A stretch of 63,744 bases of DNA, counting the filler, from Octopus bimaculoides (taxonomy: Eukaryota): assembly GCF_001194135.2 (NCBI RefSeq). It is 7 parts of 6 records of this genome, joined end to end, with 100 filler letters (N's around TTAATTAATTAA, not from the genome) between each part and the next. Parts side by side here need not be neighbours in the genome. Positions count along the whole stretch, not along the records: positions 32,637 to 45,518 come from NC_068993.1; 6 more parts are not named here. One strand, 5' to 3'. A program made the position numbers and the translations under genes. Under the pieces are notes generated by a model that was given only the letters and a program-made list of their open reading frames with translations, was not told where the DNA came from and made no database searches. This document shows, in pieces, positions 32,816-63,035 of the stretch (positions are counted from its first letter, which is position 1; every line of letters starts with the position of its first letter).

Positions 32816-33204
32816 ACAAACATATTCTTCATTCTTATCTAACAAACGACCATATATTTTATTGACATGTTTAACAGTAGGCCCTCACTAACCCTCACAA
32901 TTTATTATATTCCTTCCGTCCGTTCATAGATTTTTCCCTCACTGAATAACCCTAACCCTAAACCTAGCCCTAACCACCATCCTTATATCTCTTCACCTCT
33001 CGGCCCCTCATCCGTTTTTCTTAATTTGATATATTTATTATGAAACGAATTCCTAATGTGTTTCGTCCGTATTGAAATTATAGCTGGCATCACTGTCACC
33101 ATCACCATCCCACCATCATCATCCCCACCACCATCATCATGCATATGATCGTGATTATCAACATCAACCTCACAACTTAAACACTCAAACGATAACAGTA
33201 AAAT

Positions 33205-33512
33205 TAACACCACCACCACCACAACTACCACCACCACAACTACCACCACCACCACAACTACCACCACCACCACAACTACCACCACCACCACAACTNNNNN
33301 NNNNNNNNNNNNNNNNNNNNNNNNNNNNNNNNNNNNNNNNNNNNNNNNNNNNNNNNNNNNNNNNNNNNNNNNNNNNNNNNNNNNNNNNNNNNNNNNNNNN
33401 NNNNNNNNNNNNNNNNNNNNNNNNNNNNTACCACCACCACAACTACCACCACCACCACAACTACCACCACCACCACAACTACCACCACCACAACTACCAC
33501 CACCACCACCAT
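33205..33512. repeat. (CCACCACCACAACTA)-type 15/18-bp repeat spanning a gap
   Basis: Visible directly on both sides of the N gap 33296-33428. Confidence 0.85.
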
Positions 33513-35954
33513 CACCACCACTTCTATTAACAGTCACTACAATAGTAACATTTCTAATACCCATCAGGCAAACATCAACTATCAAGCTCATGATGATGAC
33601 GATGACGATGATGATGACGATGACGATGATGATGATGATGATCATCATCATCATCCTTATCATCCTTATCAGCATCGTCATCGTTCTCGTCGTCGGCACG
33701 ATCATCATCAACATTTTCCTCCTGCTCTTCTCTTCCTACCCTTCACCATCATCATTATCATGAGCATCATCATCTTTGTCGTCCTCATCATCGTCATCAT
33801 CGTCGTCCTCCTCTCCTTCCTTCCTCCTCCTCTTCCTCCTCCTCCTCGTCCTCCTCTGCACTTTCATCGTTATCGTTATCGTCTTCGAGGTTGCCATACC
33901 TGTCGTTATAACTAACAGCACCACAGACACCAGCAACATTTCACACTCCAACGGCTACTATCACTGCAACCGCAATTACCACCAACGTAACAACAATCAA
34001 TATGAAAACAGCAACAACATCCACAACAAAAAAATTCTGCAAAAATTACAGCTACGGTCAAAGCTAATTTAATCACAACTACGAACAACACTATATCCAA
34101 CCGCAACAACTCTCACAACAATATCTCAAACCACTGCAAGCACTACAATCACTACCAGTACAACCACCGATACCTCTTAACCTAACAATAATACCGATGC
34201 TGCAGGCATCGCAACTCAAACCACTACAGCAGTGGTAACAATGATAGCGGCTGTAACTAACGAAATCACTGCGATTATACTCTCTACTATAGTCATGAAA
34301 GTGAAAGCAAGTGTCTTTGTGTTTAACGGTTTGGGTTGTTGATCTTGGGTTTTAATGTCCATTAGTAAAATATCTTATTCCACGCTGCATCGGCTTACTG
34401 AGCTGAAAATGAGTAGCAGGAATAATTGATATAGCTCTCTCTATCTCTAGCAGTTATATCTGCTTCTTGCAGGCTCAAGGGTCAAAGAACTGACAGGATG
34501 TTTATTTCTTTTCACAACTACATAGTCATCGAAAACAATTAGTAAAAGCGTGTTGTATGTTACTAAATCATATTCGCTTTCGAGTGACGGCTAAGCTTTT
34601 TAATCTCTATGGACAGTGTCATAAAAATCTCTCTTTTACTATCCTTTTTCCACTCCTGCTCCTACCTCTACACATCCTCACACTCTTCCTTCTATTTCTT
34701 CTTCGAATCAGTATCAACCGTATCTTCTGTTCTACTATCATGCGAAGCTAGCCATAGCAGCCAAATCTTCCCTCAATACCCATTGCGTCGCCGCCGTGAA
34801 AAAATAGATCATGACACGATGAAAAATGACGTCTGGTAAACTACAACGTCTGAGTAAGTGAAATGGCCACGGCTGGAAAACATTTAAATAAAATACAGTT
34901 CAACTAAAGCTCGTCTTTGATCTAACCAAATGCAAATATAACATTATTATCTTCCAAATTATCATCATCATAATCATCATCATCATTAAGATTGTCGTCG
35001 CCGTCACCACCAGTGATACCACTACCACCACCATCACCATCACCATCAGCACTGCCACTGTTGCCCGTGTCAACTTCGTAGAAATATTCTTCAGAAACAT
35101 TTTCTCTTACTGCTTATTCTAAACAAAATGGCGTTAACTTTTACATCCTCTATTGTTGCACGACTAGATGTCGCTGCTGTTGTCTTTGTTTTTGATGTCA
35201 CCATCGTCATTGCTTTAGTTGTTTGTAGTTTCCGTTGTTATTGATTTTGAAAGAGAACAGCTGCCATATTGCTGATCCAAATTATAACTGACTGTTACAT
35301 TGACCTGCAATGTCAGAAGTCTCATTTTTTTTTCATGCTGGTTTTCTATATTACACACACACACACACGCACACACACACACACGCACACACACACACAA
35401 GCACGTACGCACTCGCATGCACATGATCACACGCGCATGCACACACATGCACGCAGACACATGCACACACACATACGCACATATATATATAGACATATCT
35501 ATATACATATAAAATCTTTCTTTTTTGAATATATATATATATACGTAGATATGTATGCTTGTAGGTATGTATGTATATGTGTGTATGTATGTATGTATGT
35601 ATGTATGTACGTATGTATGTACAAGGTGTTGGGGTTAAATTATATAGATAGCACAAAAGGAAAAAAAATGTATTTTAAAAAATCAAAATTATCAACTACA
35701 TTATGGCTGGGAGAAGACAGTTTATTCAAAGCAGCTACCCTCAGCCTCCGCTACGGCTGCAAGACGGCTCCGGAATCTAATGCATTCGTTTCAAACTGTG
35801 TCTTTGGGAAGATCTTCAAGCACCTCCTGGATATTGGCCGCCAGCTATCCTTGTTGATGCAGACAGAAGTAGTGGTGTCTTTTTCAGTCGAACTCTCCTC
35901 ACATCGATTTGGTTTTGCGTCCATTTCTAAGTTAAATATCCTTACTAAAGATAT

Positions 35955-37929: not shown

Positions 37930-38531
37930 TTCCTCCTTTACTCGTTTTCGTTGCTCACACGTGACCATCGTCCATCTTCCTCTTCTTCACGTGATCATCT
38001 TTCTTTTCCTTCAGTCTGTTGCACAGACCAGTCGCATTTTTATCTGTCTCCTCTCTTATCTTTTCTCTTGTCAAAGAATATTCCTCCAGCGTTCGCTCCC
38101 TTACTCGTCTGGCCTATCGTCCCTCCATGTTTGTTTTCGTTTGGTTTGTTGTATGTCTCCCCTGTCCTATTTTTCTTTGACCCTCCGCAAAAATCCCAAA
38201 TTTTATTTTGGTTCGCCGGGGCAACTGTTTTTCGAAACCTCATATTGTCGTTAATTGCTCGAAATATGGAGTAGATGAACAGCTGACAACTGATGAAGGG
38301 TTGTTCTTTATGTTACTTGTCTTGTTTCTCATTTGTTTTTCCCGTTGTTCGCATACCCAAGTTTGCCTTCGTATTTCATGTTTACGTTTTGTGACGTCCT
38401 GTAGCCATATATGTATATATGTATATATATATATGTAAGTACATACATATATGCATGTATACATGCATCTATATATATATATATATACATACATTGACAG
38501 GGGAGATAACCGCCCAAGAAGCGTCTCTAGG

Positions 38532-38584
38532 ATCACTAGACAAGACGAGTTTCGCCTATCGGTCGTAGGCTCGTCAGTAGCGAC
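38532..38584 (-). ncRNA. Type I hammerhead ribozyme with intact catalytic core
   Basis: The minus strand reads GUCGCUA-CUGACGA-GCCUA-CGACCGA-UAGGC-GAAAC-UCGUCUU-GUC-UAGUGAU. This gives a 7-bp stem I, the core CUGANGA, a perfect 5-bp stem II closed by G-C, GAAA, a 2-bp stem III and a GUC cleavage triplet. Confidence 0.88.
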
Positions 38585-40059
38585 TACTCAAACGGGCAAT
38601 GGTCTAGCTAAATCTGGCTGTCAGTATATATATATTTTACCATAAAATATATGGCTAATTTAGCGAAATGCTAATGCTTATATTAAAAATTAATATAAAC
38701 AGCTAGGCGCACCCAGTCAGTTATGTATATATAGCGTGCTTCTAAGAGCATTAAGCGTTTTAACTCTTATTCCTTTCAAACTTTTCGTTTATGGTATTAT
38801 TGCGTCTAGCTGTCTATCTATATTAATGGTGTGTGTATGTGTACACGACCTAACTGAGTGGAGTTTCTATGAACTAAATCAGAGTACTATTGACAGAATA
38901 TGGAACATGGAATTTTCTCCACCATTAGGGTAAGAGAAAATTAAACATGACGTTTATTCACTGTGATAAAAGGAGGTGGAATATACCGGCATGTAGATTG
39001 AACCGGTAAAGAAAAGACTGAGGTTCGAATTTCACAGAATATGAGAAAGAAGTCAAACTGGATAATACACTGTTTTACTTCGCCTAGTGATTCGAGAATG
39101 TGTGGAGGTAAATTTCATGTTATACGCAATTATGAAGAACAAACTATTTTTGTAGCTACCAACCTAACAACTAGTATGCGTATGCAAGCTTTCTTACCTA
39201 GCTTTCCGTCACTGTGTCCATTAATGTATTTTTCAGTGAATATGTTGAGATACCTATTCGTACATCTGTATTACTTGTCTATTTTAGTGCTTGCATTCCC
39301 CTTACTTATAGCCTTACTTAGTTTGCATATATATTTTAGTGAGTGTGTGAGTGCGAGCGTGCCAGTGCGTTTGTCTGTTCACATGCGTGGATGGTTTGCG
39401 TCCATACAACGTACGTGTGTGTGTACGTATACTTGTACGTAAGCATGCATCACTTTCTTCAATTTGTGGACATCGTAAAATTCTTCAGCCAAAATCACAT
39501 TTTTCACAGCCCAGTTCAAACAGTAAACTAGTTTTTCGTTAGATTCAGATGAACGCTTCTGTTTCCTTCTTTGGTTAAATCTTAAATTTATATGTGACAG
39601 TGAGGAACACCTTAGTTTTTCTTTTCCTTTTATCTAGTTTTTTTTTTGTCTCTCTCTCTCTCTATATATATCTTCTACCAGCCTTGCTTTTTATCTTAAT
39701 TTAATTTTTGTTTTATTTTCGATTTATTTTCTGTTTAGTTATTTATTTATTTTTAGTTTTAGATTTTTTATCAAGTTTTTTGTTACCTTCTGTCAATGCC
39801 GGGGTGGAGAGAGGAGTTGAGCGGCCATCACTTATAAAATGCCCCAACGGCCAGCGCAAGACCAGTCTTCTAACAGTCAATTCCAACTCCTTCGCCAAAC
39901 CAACAGAAGAGTGGTAATGGTGCCTTCAAATAACCAGTGCTCCGGGTAGGCTGTATTCGTCAGCCTTGGAGGGCAAGCAATCTAGGATAAGGAACACTCT
40001 GAATTCAAAACCAGAGGAGCAAGGACCTGCTGTCTTGGCGGACTACCTTCGTAGAGATA

Positions 40060-62550: not shown

Positions 62551-63035
62551 CTTTATTTCATATTTGCCATAAGGCAATACATACTAAATGCAAGAATTTT
62601 CTACCTACATCTGTCCTAATATTAAGGGAGAAGAGGGTGACATACCATAAAACTTTCCGAGACCTATTGTTACTAGATGATAGATGAGGTGGTGGGTTGT
62701 AAAAGATTTTATCAGTAAAGCTGCTATCCTGTAAAGCCTTATTATTATATGGGGCAGCCTTTTCGAATATTTCTTTGGCAGAAGAAAGGTATGTGATCCT
62801 ACAGCTAATATCTGGAATTAAAATTTTAGATACAATTGGTGGGCGACAGGAGAGTTTATCAATGTATTTAAAGTTCTCATTAGGTTTGTAGAAAGGCTTA
62901 TGTTAATCAGTTCTCGCTAGGTTGGTATCGATAGATGTTTTAAGTCTTAAAAAGCTGAAGGTACAAATTAATTGTTTTCTAAAGGAATCCATGCCATGGA
63001 TATCACAGCCGTGATACTGCTAAAGCATCGTTGCA
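62551..63035 (-). mobile_element. Penelope-like element (PLE) RT C-terminal remnant
   Basis: Near-continuous reading HKPFYKPNENFKYIDKLSCRPPIVSKILIPDISCRITYLSSAKEIFEKAAPY..KALQDSSF...NNRSRKVLWYVT..SLNIRTDVGRKFLHL, typical of PLE ORFs. Confidence 0.75.

What the first reader, a model, noticed from the sequence alone, without database searches (positions are those of the whole stretch)
38495..38624. Intact type I hammerhead ribozyme in a ~130-nt self-folding cassette inserted in a TA repeat
Seen: on the minus strand every catalytic-core nucleotide is present: CUGACGA (38577-38571), stem II GCCUA/UAGGC with a 7-nt loop, GAAAC (38553-38549), a 7-nt loop 3 and the cleavage triplet GUC (38541-38539). 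Stem I is GUCGCUA/UAGUGAU (7 bp, two G-U pairs), so predicted cleavage is between 38539 and 38538. The flanks extend the helix through an internal loop: AUUGCCC/GGGCGGU, AGAU/AUCU and terminal UGACAG/CUGUCA. The cassette folds as one rod and sits between TA-rich microsatellite on both sides. Known: type I hammerheads with a short stem III occur in animal satellite/SINE-like repeats (Schistosoma Sm-alpha, newt satellite 2), in Penelope-like elements and in retrozymes. Inference: this is a monomer of a small ribozyme-bearing, circular-RNA-type mobile element, possibly mobilised by PLEs (a PLE remnant is at 62551-63035). I cannot tell whether it has been described in this lineage.
Basis: partly seen in the sequence, partly recalled or inferred. 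Interest (0 to 1): 0.9.

Follow-up and report, generated by a model that had tools for sequence, protein, structure and literature searches.

The report
Lone hammerhead ribozyme motif in small element
A 130-base, GC-rich insert in a TA-rich repeat carries every sequence feature of a type I hammerhead self-cleaving RNA, and is most likely a stray, probably weakly active copy of the ribozyme-bearing retroelements already known in animals.

Summary
On the minus strand, CUGACGA, a 5-bp helix II, GAAA, a 2-bp helix III, the GUC triplet and a 7-bp helix I form a type I hammerhead. My descriptor scan finds only this motif in the piece. I estimate about 2.5e-5 chance motifs of this quality per piece, though a few per multi-gigabase genome.

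The cassette is a discrete island: 52% GC against 36% for the piece, TA-rich flanks of 16-20% GC, a 6-nt terminal inverted repeat, and an unbranched fold on the ribozyme strand only.

Several tests weaken the strong claims:
- Rfam gives only sub-threshold hits (at most 21 bits; gathering score 48.5).
- The fold energy is not unusual (z = -1.14).
- A competing hairpin that pairs the core GACGAG with loop 3 CUCGUC is about 9 kcal/mol more stable than the catalytic fold.
- Helix III is not palindromic, unlike in validated animal retrozyme hammerheads.
- There is no second copy, tandem array or Penelope-like ORF in the 12.9-kb piece.
- No relatives could be retrieved from any collection.

Best reading: a solitary, possibly decayed monomer of a Penelope-related, retrozyme-type element. 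It is a new member of a known kind, of modest interest.

The parts
38495..38624 (-). The whole cassette: a 130-nt GC-rich island (52.3% GC) carrying the hammerhead motif.
   Evidence: Sequence. GC 0.523 against 0.364 for the piece, in the top 0.7% of 130-nt windows. Unbranched MFE fold with paired ends.
38578..38584 (-). Helix I, 5' strand GUCGCUA.
   Evidence: Pairs with 38532-38538 (7 bp, two G-U)..
38571..38577 (-). Catalytic box CUGACGA (C3-A9, with N7 = C).
38554..38570 (-). Helix II hairpin GCCUA-CGACCGA-UAGGC, including the G10.1-C11.1 pair.
38550..38553 (-). Catalytic box GAAA (G12-A15.1).
38540..38550 (-). Helix III region ACUCGUCUUGU: only A15.1-U16.1 and C15.2-G16.2 pair, around a 7-nt loop. 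It is not self-complementary.
   Evidence: Self-complementarity 0.55, against 1.0 in three validated retrozyme hammerheads.
38538..38539 (-). Predicted scissile bond, 3' of C17 (38539) and before U1.1 (38538).
   Evidence: Follows from the hammerhead numbering applied. Not tested experimentally.
38532..38538 (-). Helix I, 3' strand UAGUGAU.
38570..38575 (-). GACGAG (core G5-A9 plus G10.1), the 5' arm of the competing inactive helix.
   Evidence: In the MFE it pairs with CUCGUC at 38544-38549. The 53-nt domain folds at -17.4 kcal/mol, against -8.3 for the hammerhead secondary structure.
38544..38549 (-). CUCGUC (C15.2 plus loop 3), the 3' arm of the competing helix.
38539..38543 (-). UUGUC, a possible 5-nt tandem duplicate of the preceding UCGUC (38544-38548). 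Without it, helix III would read GAAAC-UC-GUC, the canonical short animal form.
   Evidence: Read directly. The variant with the 5 nt removed still parses with the same helices I and II. This is inference only.
38594..38600 (-). AUUGCCC, which can pair with GGGCGGU (38509-38515) to extend helix I beyond an internal loop.
   Evidence: The MFE uses partly different pairings in this region.
38509..38515 (-). GGGCGGU, the partner of AUUGCCC.
38618..38623 (-). Terminal UGACAG, one arm of the 6-nt terminal inverted repeat (10 of 12 matching if extended through AGAU).
   Evidence: Such terminal repeats occur in about 0.1-0.2% of 130-nt windows of the piece.
38495..38500 (-). Terminal CUGUCA, the other arm of the terminal inverted repeat.
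38404..38494 (.). TA/TGTA-rich microsatellite at the 3' side of the cassette in ribozyme orientation. It is either the target or the element's own tail.
   Evidence: TRF rows at 38407-38491. GC 0.198.
38625..38656 (.). Short (TA)6 and T-rich tract at the 5' side of the cassette.
   Evidence: GC 0.156.

Best explanation
The cassette is a solitary copy of a small non-coding, hammerhead-bearing retroelement. It belongs to the family that includes animal non-LTR retrozymes and the terminal repeats (pLTRs) of Penelope-like elements.

Inferred steps: it was copied into a TA-rich microsatellite by a retroelement's reverse transcriptase and endonuclease acting in trans, and it is now a dead-end monomer.

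If transcribed from the minus strand, the RNA could in principle cut itself after C38539. This copy is probably a poor or inactive ribozyme for four reasons. Helix III is only 2 bp with a 7-nt loop. Helix III is not palindromic, so it cannot be rescued by dimerisation. A hairpin that sequesters the catalytic core is predicted to be far more stable. No second ribozyme lies nearby to release a unit-length or circular RNA.

Shown: the motif, its improbability by chance within the piece, the discrete GC-rich and rod-like cassette, and the TA-rich flanks. Inferred: membership of a repeat family, the link to Penelope-like elements or retrozymes, the mode of insertion, and the catalytic state.
For: - All core nucleotides and three helices are present in type I topology.
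- A chance motif of this quality is expected about 2.5e-5 times per piece (plus my analytic estimate).
- The G10.1-C11.1 pair and the GUC triplet match natural hammerheads.
- The cassette is a compositional island: 52% GC against 36%, with flanks at 16-20%.
- It has a terminal inverted repeat that is rare among random windows, about 0.1-0.2%.
- It folds unbranched on the ribozyme strand. Only 7% of shuffles are unbranched and 0.4% are also end-paired. The other strand folds into four hairpins.
- Most hammerheads in animal genomes are single dispersed motifs ascribed to truncated Penelope-like elements (PMC4209133).
- Retrozyme families leave dispersed monomers, have consensus lengths of 51-972 bp and are related to pLTRs (bioRxiv 10.64898/2026.07.22.740005).
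- (TA)n is a preferred target of Naiad and Neptune-type elements, and pLTRs carry hammerheads (PMC8557442).
- Helix sizes resemble validated coral, mussel and axolotl retrozyme hammerheads.
Against: - No Rfam hit at gathering score. The best is 21 bits to the wrong-topology Hammerhead_3 model, which scales to E of about 1.7 over the whole piece (my rescaling of the E-value).
- No second copy or tandem in 12.9 kb.
- No related sequence was recovered from any collection, so no covariation evidence exists.
- No RT or GIY-YIG ORF is nearby.
- Helix III is non-palindromic, unlike all validated animal retrozyme hammerheads examined.
- It lacks the Penelope-type 'min-HHR' hallmarks: the extra nucleotide between A9 and G10.1, and a 7-8 bp helix II (PMC4209133).
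- The catalytic secondary structure is 9 kcal/mol less stable than the competing hairpin.
- Total fold energy is not better than shuffles (z = -1.14).
- At genome scale, a few chance motifs of this quality are expected.
Confidence: 0.6

Rival explanations
1. A chance hammerhead look-alike sits inside an unrelated small hairpin-forming repeat, such as a MITE-like element with short terminal inverted repeats inserted at TA. In that case helices I and II are simply the arms of an imperfect palindrome, and the conserved boxes arose by chance.
For: - The cassette has terminal inverted repeats, TA-rich flanks and a hairpin-like fold.
- The most stable fold pairs the 'catalytic core' with 'loop 3', as expected for a plain hairpin.
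- Rfam scores are sub-threshold.
- Helix III is atypical.
- No family members were found.
- A few chance motifs per large genome are expected (plus my estimate).
Against: - Even if both stems are granted for free, CUGANGA plus a GAAA bulge plus UH in the right register costs about 22 bits per hairpin.
- The rod forms only on the ribozyme strand and uses 5 G-U pairs, whereas a DNA palindrome should fold alike on both strands.
- No clean TA target-site duplication can be read, and the ends are not Tc1/mariner- or hAT-like.
- The G10.1-C11.1 pair and the GUC triplet are the natural choices.
Confidence: 0.2
2. It is a SINE-like, LINE-mobilised short retroposon carrying a hammerhead, in the manner of Schistosoma Sm-alpha. 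On this reading the long TGTA/TA microsatellite on its 3' side is the element's own tail rather than the target.
For: - The ~90-nt microsatellite lies exactly at the 3' end in ribozyme orientation, while the 5' TA tract is only about 12 nt.
- LINE-like ORF debris (39918-40311) and tRNA-like SINE copies show that LINE-driven retroposition operates in this region.
Against: - ARAGORN finds no tRNA-like structure, and I saw no Pol III boxes in the sequence by eye.
- There is no A-rich tail.
- TA-rich sequence is present on both sides.
- No family was recovered to define the element's ends.
Confidence: 0.1
3. It is a host-domesticated, single-copy functional ribozyme, like the intronic HH9/HH10 hammerheads of amniotes, that processes a host transcript.
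For: It is solitary, and the core is formally intact.
Against: - Helix III is weak and a competing fold is strong, unlike domesticated hammerheads, which as I recall have stable helices III.
- The setting is microsatellite and transposon debris with no recognisable gene.
- Conservation data are not available.
Confidence: 0.05

Closest known systems
Animal non-LTR retrozymes (type I hammerhead tandem repeats expressed as small circular RNAs; Cervera & de la Pena 2020, PMC7229834)
   Same: Both have a type I hammerhead with a 6-7 bp helix I, a 4-5 bp helix II, a short helix III and a GUC site. Both are non-coding and highly self-paired, with the hammerhead embedded in the rod. Dispersed monomer derivatives are documented (bioRxiv 10.64898/2026.07.22.740005).
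   Different: This is a single copy, not a tandem array. At 130 nt it is shorter than the usual 170-400 nt. Its GC content is 52%, where those repeats are described as below 45-50%. Helix III is not palindromic (0.55 against 1.0 self-complementarity). No circular RNA or copy-number evidence exists.
Hammerheads in the terminal repeats (pLTRs) of Penelope-like elements, and their dispersed truncated copies (Cervera & de la Pena 2014, PMC4209133; Craig et al. 2021, PMC8557442)
   Same: Both occur as single dispersed motifs in animal genomes. Both are associated with insertion into microsatellites, and (TA)n is a documented preferred target of some clades. Low expected monomer activity is typical.
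   Different: No RT/GIY-YIG ORF or second pLTR lies nearby. The 'min-HHR' traits are absent: there is no unpaired nucleotide between A9 and G10.1, helix II is 5 bp rather than 7-8 bp, and a 7-nt loop 3 is present. A random 5' truncation would not be expected to produce terminal complementarity.
Rfam Hammerhead_1 (RF00163) and Hammerhead_3 (RF00008)
   Same: They share the catalytic boxes and helix II. The covariance models align CUGACGAG...CGAAAC correctly.
   Different: Scores of 21 bits or less fall far below the gathering score of 48.5 for Hammerhead_3, and Hammerhead_1 scores lower still. By Rfam's curated criterion it would not be annotated as a hammerhead.
Schistosoma Sm-alpha, newt satellite 2 and cave-cricket pDo500 hammerhead repeats
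   Same: All are short non-autonomous repeats carrying type I hammerheads with a weak helix III.
   Different: Those are high-copy families that act as dimers through an extended helix III (from established knowledge, and PMC4209133 and PMC7229834). Here no family, tandem array or palindromic helix III was found.
Phage and bacterial hammerheads sharing the same helix II sequence (GCCUA...UAGGC)
   Same: They have identical core boxes and helix II arms (112 metagenome, 60 viral and 4 genome stretches).
   Different: In the rows read they have a long, stable helix III hairpin and a short helix I of about 4 bp, and their flanks and loops are unrelated. The similarity is convergent, not homologous.

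Membership tests
Hammerhead ribozyme, type I | Conserved core: C3 U4 G5 A6 N7 G8 A9, G12 A13 A14, A15.1-U16.1, and H17 at the cleavage site. | tested here: met
   CUGACGA at 38577-38571, GAAA at 38553-38550, U at 38540 and C at 38539.
Hammerhead ribozyme, type I | Three helices around the core, with helices II and III closed by loops and helix I open. | tested here: met
   Helix I is 7 bp. Helix II is 5 bp with a 7-nt loop. Helix III is 2 bp with a 7-nt loop. Helix III is marginal.
Hammerhead ribozyme, type I | Score at or above the curated Rfam gathering threshold. | tested here: not met
   No gathering hit. The best scores are 21.0 and 19.6 bits to Hammerhead_3 (gathering score 48.5) and 13.8 bits to RAGATH-1-hammerhead.
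Hammerhead ribozyme, type I | The catalytic fold is thermodynamically accessible. | tested here: inconclusive
   The hammerhead secondary structure scores -8.3 kcal/mol, against -17.4 for a competing hairpin in the 53-nt domain. Tertiary contacts and co-transcriptional folding are not modelled.
Hammerhead ribozyme, type I | Loop 1-loop 2 tertiary contacts of canonical animal hammerheads. | not tested
   I had no reliable consensus to score against, and these tools predict no 3D RNA structure.
Hammerhead ribozyme, type I | Mg2+-dependent self-cleavage at the predicted site. | not testable with these tools
   This needs an in vitro transcription and cleavage assay.
Animal non-LTR retrozyme | Head-to-tail tandem repeats, so that two hammerheads flank a unit. 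| tested here: not met
   The 12.9-kb piece holds one motif, and no repeat of the cassette.
Animal non-LTR retrozyme | Short helix III with a palindromic A15.1..U16.1 segment, allowing an active dimer. | tested here: not met
   Self-complementarity is 0.55 (0.67 without the putative 5-nt duplication), against 1.0 in the coral, mussel and axolotl retrozyme hammerheads.
Animal non-LTR retrozyme | A multi-copy family in the genome, expressed as circular RNA. | not testable with these tools
   The source genome and its transcriptome are not in any searchable collection.
Animal non-LTR retrozyme | A highly self-paired (rod or branched) non-coding unit. | tested here: met
   The MFE is unbranched with 38 pairs. 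Only 7.1% of shuffles are unbranched. The energy itself is not exceptional.
Penelope-like element (full, or with pLTR) | An adjacent ORF with a telomerase-like RT and a GIY-YIG endonuclease, flanked by direct repeats. | tested here: not met
   I saw no RT or GIY-YIG motifs in the six-frame stop-free stretches. Pfam found no such hits in the ten longest flanking stretches. There are no flanking direct repeats.
Penelope-like element (full, or with pLTR) | Sequence homology of the cassette to a pLTR of an element in the same genome. | not testable with these tools
   No access to the source genome or to Repbase.
MITE (Tc1/mariner- or hAT-type) | Terminal inverted repeats plus a target-site duplication of defined length. 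| tested here: inconclusive
   A 6-nt inverted repeat is present, 10 of 12 if extended. No clean TA or 8-bp duplication can be read in the microsatellite context.

The most novel reading that the evidence does not exclude
The cassette represents a previously undescribed class of very small (~130 nt) hammerhead-bearing rod elements with defined, mutually complementary termini. One possibility is the smallest retrozyme-like unit known, whose native rod masks the ribozyme core as a built-in switch. The other is a DNA-level, MITE-like element that carries a ribozyme.
Probability: 0.08. Interest if true: 0.6.

Novelty: new member of a known kind. Interest (0 to 1): 0.3.

Why it matters
If the family link holds, this is one more example of hammerhead-bearing retroelement debris, which is already known to be common in invertebrate and lower-vertebrate genomes. 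It would add a lineage and a somewhat unusual variant: a large non-palindromic loop 3, with the core masked in a rod. It would not change how these elements are understood.

It is also a useful calibration case. A motif that satisfies every textbook hammerhead rule can still fall far below Rfam thresholds and be predicted to misfold. Calls of this kind therefore need copy-number and covariation evidence before being labelled active ribozymes.

Tried and rejected
1. Rfam at gathering thresholds over the whole piece gave nothing. E-value mode gave only sub-threshold hammerhead-clan hits. It also gave many spurious sub-threshold microRNA-family hits on the TA-rich palindromic microsatellite.

2. 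I searched for relatives by translating the one frame that is open across the whole cassette and querying the 5.8-billion-protein collection. No candidate was found.

3. Exact look-up of ten window ORFs found none in the collection. The source genome therefore cannot be reached through the look-up of encoding contigs.

4. I scanned the metagenome, viral and GTDB collections for CTGANGAGCCTA-N5-9-TAGGCGAAAC. This returned 112, 60 and 4 stretches. The rows I read (the printout was cut for roughly ten loci) are prokaryotic or phage hammerheads with a long helix III, a 4-bp helix I and unrelated flanks, so they are not relatives.

5. BLAST of the cassette against plasmids, to exclude an engineered ribozyme cassette, found no match.

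6. I tried to identify the lineage from the LINE-like ORF fragment. The only hit was 52% identical, on a eukaryote-like contig in an ENA metagenome, and was uninformative. A literature search for the SINE core sequence gave no hits. ARAGORN found no tRNA-like genes. From memory only, the SINE resembles the abundant octopus SINE. This was not tested.

7. hAT-type and Tc1/mariner-type end readings were rejected, because no matching target-site duplications are present.

8. A double-hammerhead (dimer) helix III was rejected, because the segment is not self-complementary.

9. Mirroring the rod onto the plus strand gave an energy I do not trust, because it forces non-canonical pairs. I did not use it.
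Full report
**1. Observation**

- helix I 5' strand GUCGCUA (38584-38578)
- CUGACGA (38577-38571)
- helix II GCCUA / loop CGACCGA / UAGGC (38570-38554)
- GAAA (38553-38550), then C at 38549
- loop UCGUCUU (38548-38542)
- GUC (38541-38539)
- helix I 3' strand UAGUGAU (38538-38532; 7 bp with two G-U pairs).

In standard hammerhead numbering the scissile bond lies between C38539 and U38538. The outer pairings AUUGCCC/GGGCGGU, AGAU/AUCU and UGACAG/CUGUCA are also present. Helix III consists only of A15.1-U16.1 and C15.2-G16.2 around a 7-nt loop.

**2. Is it more than chance?**

The bare boxes CTGANGA...GAAA...GTC are not significant. There is one match, with 0.30 expected per window.

I wrote an RNAmotif-like descriptor for type I hammerheads. 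It finds exactly one motif in the 12.9-kb piece on both strands, including under a relaxed 'minimal hammerhead' version. It also recognises three of four experimentally validated retrozyme hammerheads taken from a paper's supplement.

In 74 Mb of first-order Markov sequence with the piece's dinucleotide content, the relaxed descriptor hit 4 times. There were no hits with helix I >=5 bp and helix II >=4 bp.

My analytic extrapolation to the observed quality (helix I 7 bp, helix II 5 bp) gives about 1e-9 per strand-base. That is about 2.5e-5 per piece, but a few per 2.7-Gb genome. Chance is therefore very unlikely for this piece, yet it cannot be excluded if the scan covered whole genomes.

**3. 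Rfam**

There is no gathering-score hit anywhere in the piece.

With permissive E-value searches of small sub-windows, the best matches are Hammerhead_3 at 21.0 and 19.6 bits (gathering score 48.5) and RAGATH-1-hammerhead at 13.8 bits. Two lower-scoring clan members were suppressed, so Hammerhead_1 scores lower still. Scaled to the whole piece, the 21-bit hit would have an E-value near 1.7 (my rescaling).

The alignments place the CUGACGAG and CGAAAC boxes and helix II correctly. Hammerhead_3, whose topology differs, gets nothing from helix I. The RAGATH-1 alignment pairs only part of it.

**4. The cassette as an object**

The 130 nt are 52.3% GC, against 36.4% for the piece, which puts them in the top 0.7% of 130-nt windows. 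The flanks are 19.8% and 15.6% GC. TRF calls the 38407-38491 tract a TA-type microsatellite.

A 6-nt terminal inverted repeat (10 of 12 if extended) coincides with the compositional boundaries. Such a terminal repeat occurs in about 0.1-0.2% of 130-nt windows of the piece.

The minus-strand MFE (-37.5 kcal/mol) is a single unbranched hairpin with paired ends. Its energy is ordinary (z = -1.14). Its topology is not: 71 of 1000 dinucleotide shuffles were unbranched, and 4 of 1000 were also end-paired.

The plus strand folds into a four-hairpin branched structure. The rod is therefore specific to the ribozyme strand, and it uses 5 G-U pairs. This favours an RNA-level structure over a DNA palindrome.

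**5. Would it work as a ribozyme?**

Within the 53-nt ribozyme domain, the hammerhead secondary structure scores -8.3 kcal/mol and the MFE scores -17.4 kcal/mol. The MFE pairs the core GACGAG (38575-38570) with CUCGUC (38549-38544), which is C15.2 plus loop 3. This keeps helix I but abolishes the catalytic core.

With the hammerhead helices enforced, the whole cassette reaches -28.6 kcal/mol, against -37.5 unconstrained. By my reasoning, not simulation, the competitor's 3' arm is transcribed before the 3' strand of helix I. It could therefore act as a kinetic trap as well.

Animal type I hammerheads usually compensate for a weak helix III by dimerising through a palindromic A15.1..U16.1 segment (PMC4209133). 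The coral, mussel and axolotl retrozyme hammerheads from the supplement of PMC7229834 are 100% self-complementary over that segment. This one is 55%.

Loop 3 looks like a 5-nt tandem duplication (UCGUC then UUGUC). Removing UUGUC leaves GAAAC-UC-GUC followed by the same helix I, which is the canonical short animal helix III. This is inference, but it suggests a decayed copy.

**6. Context**

Within the piece there is no second copy of the cassette, no tandem array and no other hammerhead.

I saw no RT or GIY-YIG motifs in the six-frame stop-free stretches. Pfam finds nothing above noise in the ten longest flanking stretches.

The surroundings are microsatellites, N gaps, a frameshifted LINE-like ORF fragment at 39918-40311 and several copies of a tRNA-like SINE at 42.5-45.0 kb. 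This is a eukaryotic, probably invertebrate, intergenic or intronic region. The SINE resembles, from memory only, the abundant octopus SINE. I could not verify this.

**7. Relatives**

None could be obtained.
- The protein-word trick on the frame that is open across the cassette found nothing.
- Ten window ORFs are absent from the protein collection.
- Scans of metagenome, viral and GTDB contigs for the core plus helix II returned 112, 60 and 4 stretches.
- The rows I read are prokaryotic or phage hammerheads with long helices III, 4-bp helices I and unrelated loops and flanks (the printout was cut for about ten loci).
- The plasmid collection has no match.

The decisive family and covariation test therefore remains undone.

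**8. What it most likely is**

The literature provides the frame:
- Thousands of hammerheads in animal genomes lie in the terminal repeats of Penelope-like elements. Most are 'single elements... probably related to truncated PLEs', with low activity in vitro (PMC4209133).
- Canonical type I hammerheads lie in non-LTR retrozymes, which are tandem repeats of about 170-400 nt expressed as self-paired circular RNAs (PMC7229834).
- Retrozymes appear to be non-autonomous derivatives of pLTRs. They have consensus lengths of 51-972 bp and leave dispersed monomers (bioRxiv 10.64898/2026.07.22.740005).
- Some Penelope-like clades preferentially insert into (TA)n (PMC8557442).
- Cephalopod genomes are already annotated with Rfam Hammerhead_1 loci, 235 of them in the giant squid (PMC6962438).

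A GC-rich, rod-folding, 130-nt hammerhead cassette interrupting a TA-rich tract fits this picture as a solitary monomer (confidence about 0.6).

Rivals:
- a chance motif in an unrelated hairpin or MITE-like element (about 0.2)
- a LINE-mobilised, SINE-like hammerhead retroposon whose 3' microsatellite is its own tail (about 0.1)
- a domesticated single-copy ribozyme (about 0.05).

**9. Membership against mechanism**

It works like, or once worked like, a type I hammerhead. It meets the sequence and topology definition of the motif, but it fails the Rfam threshold.

At this locus it does not meet two defining features of retrozymes: tandem arrangement and a palindromic helix III. It is not part of a recognisable Penelope-like element. 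I therefore file it as a probable derivative of that family, not as a demonstrated member.

**10. Verdict**

It is a new member of a known kind. Interest is modest (0.3), because hammerhead-bearing retroelement debris is common and well described, and because this copy is probably catalytically impaired.

The most novel reading not excluded is a distinct class of ~130-nt hammerhead rods with defined complementary termini (probability about 0.08).

Noticed in passing
window 42528-42750, 44227-44363, 44787-45003 (partial copy at 44065-44117): There are three to four copies, 76-96% alike, of a tRNA-like SINE. Its core reads GTTCTGAGTTCAAATTCCGCCGAGGTCGACTTTGCCTTTCATCC, and it begins with an AGGCGGCGAGCTGGCAGAA box. 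ARAGORN calls no tRNA. From memory it resembles the abundant octopus SINE, but this is unverified.
   Followed up: partly
window 39918-40311 (+): A frameshifted LINE-like ORF fragment (…EELKQNIVAKKKLTRFEQRIKQYQQ… / …NKLFRTDPKRFYQ…). Its only database relative is 52% identical, a 114-aa protein on a eukaryote-like contig in an ENA metagenome (L177, where two neighbouring called genes have fn3 domains).
   Followed up: partly
window 38397-38502, both strands: The TA/TG-rich palindromic microsatellite beside the cassette gives many sub-threshold Rfam microRNA-family matches (mir-297, mir-466, mir-3149, mir-5014 and others; 30-47 bits against gathering scores of 81-101). I read these as low-complexity hairpin artefacts, not microRNA genes.
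   Followed up: yes
window 33097-33870: A block of triplet and 18-mer repeats ((CAC)n, (ACC)n, (ATG)n, (ATC)n) flanks an N gap. It gives long open frames rich in His, Asp, Ser and Gly on both strands. It could be a low-complexity coding exon or just microsatellite.
   Followed up: no
window 38647-38656 and 38403-38412: Outside the TA tracts, AGCCATATAT (minus strand, upstream) and ATATATGGCT (downstream) are reverse complements. The cassette plus its TA flanks is therefore bracketed by a further 10-nt inverted repeat, which may be chance.
   Followed up: no
loci L001-L176 (e.g. L001 1281-1310, L128, L164, L169): A large set of marine, freshwater and phage-like contigs carries hammerheads with the same helix II arms (GCCUA...UAGGC), a long helix III and a 4-bp helix I. 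Several recurrent sequence families are visible. Some contigs hold two copies about 500-600 nt apart. In many, the motif is followed within about 20-40 nt by a GGAG-type ribosome-binding-like sequence.
   Followed up: partly
window 33295-33425 and 43236-43364: Two runs of N (assembly gaps) sit inside repeats. This suggests a short-read scaffold assembly in which repeat copy numbers, including any tandem ribozyme arrays elsewhere, may be collapsed.
   Followed up: no
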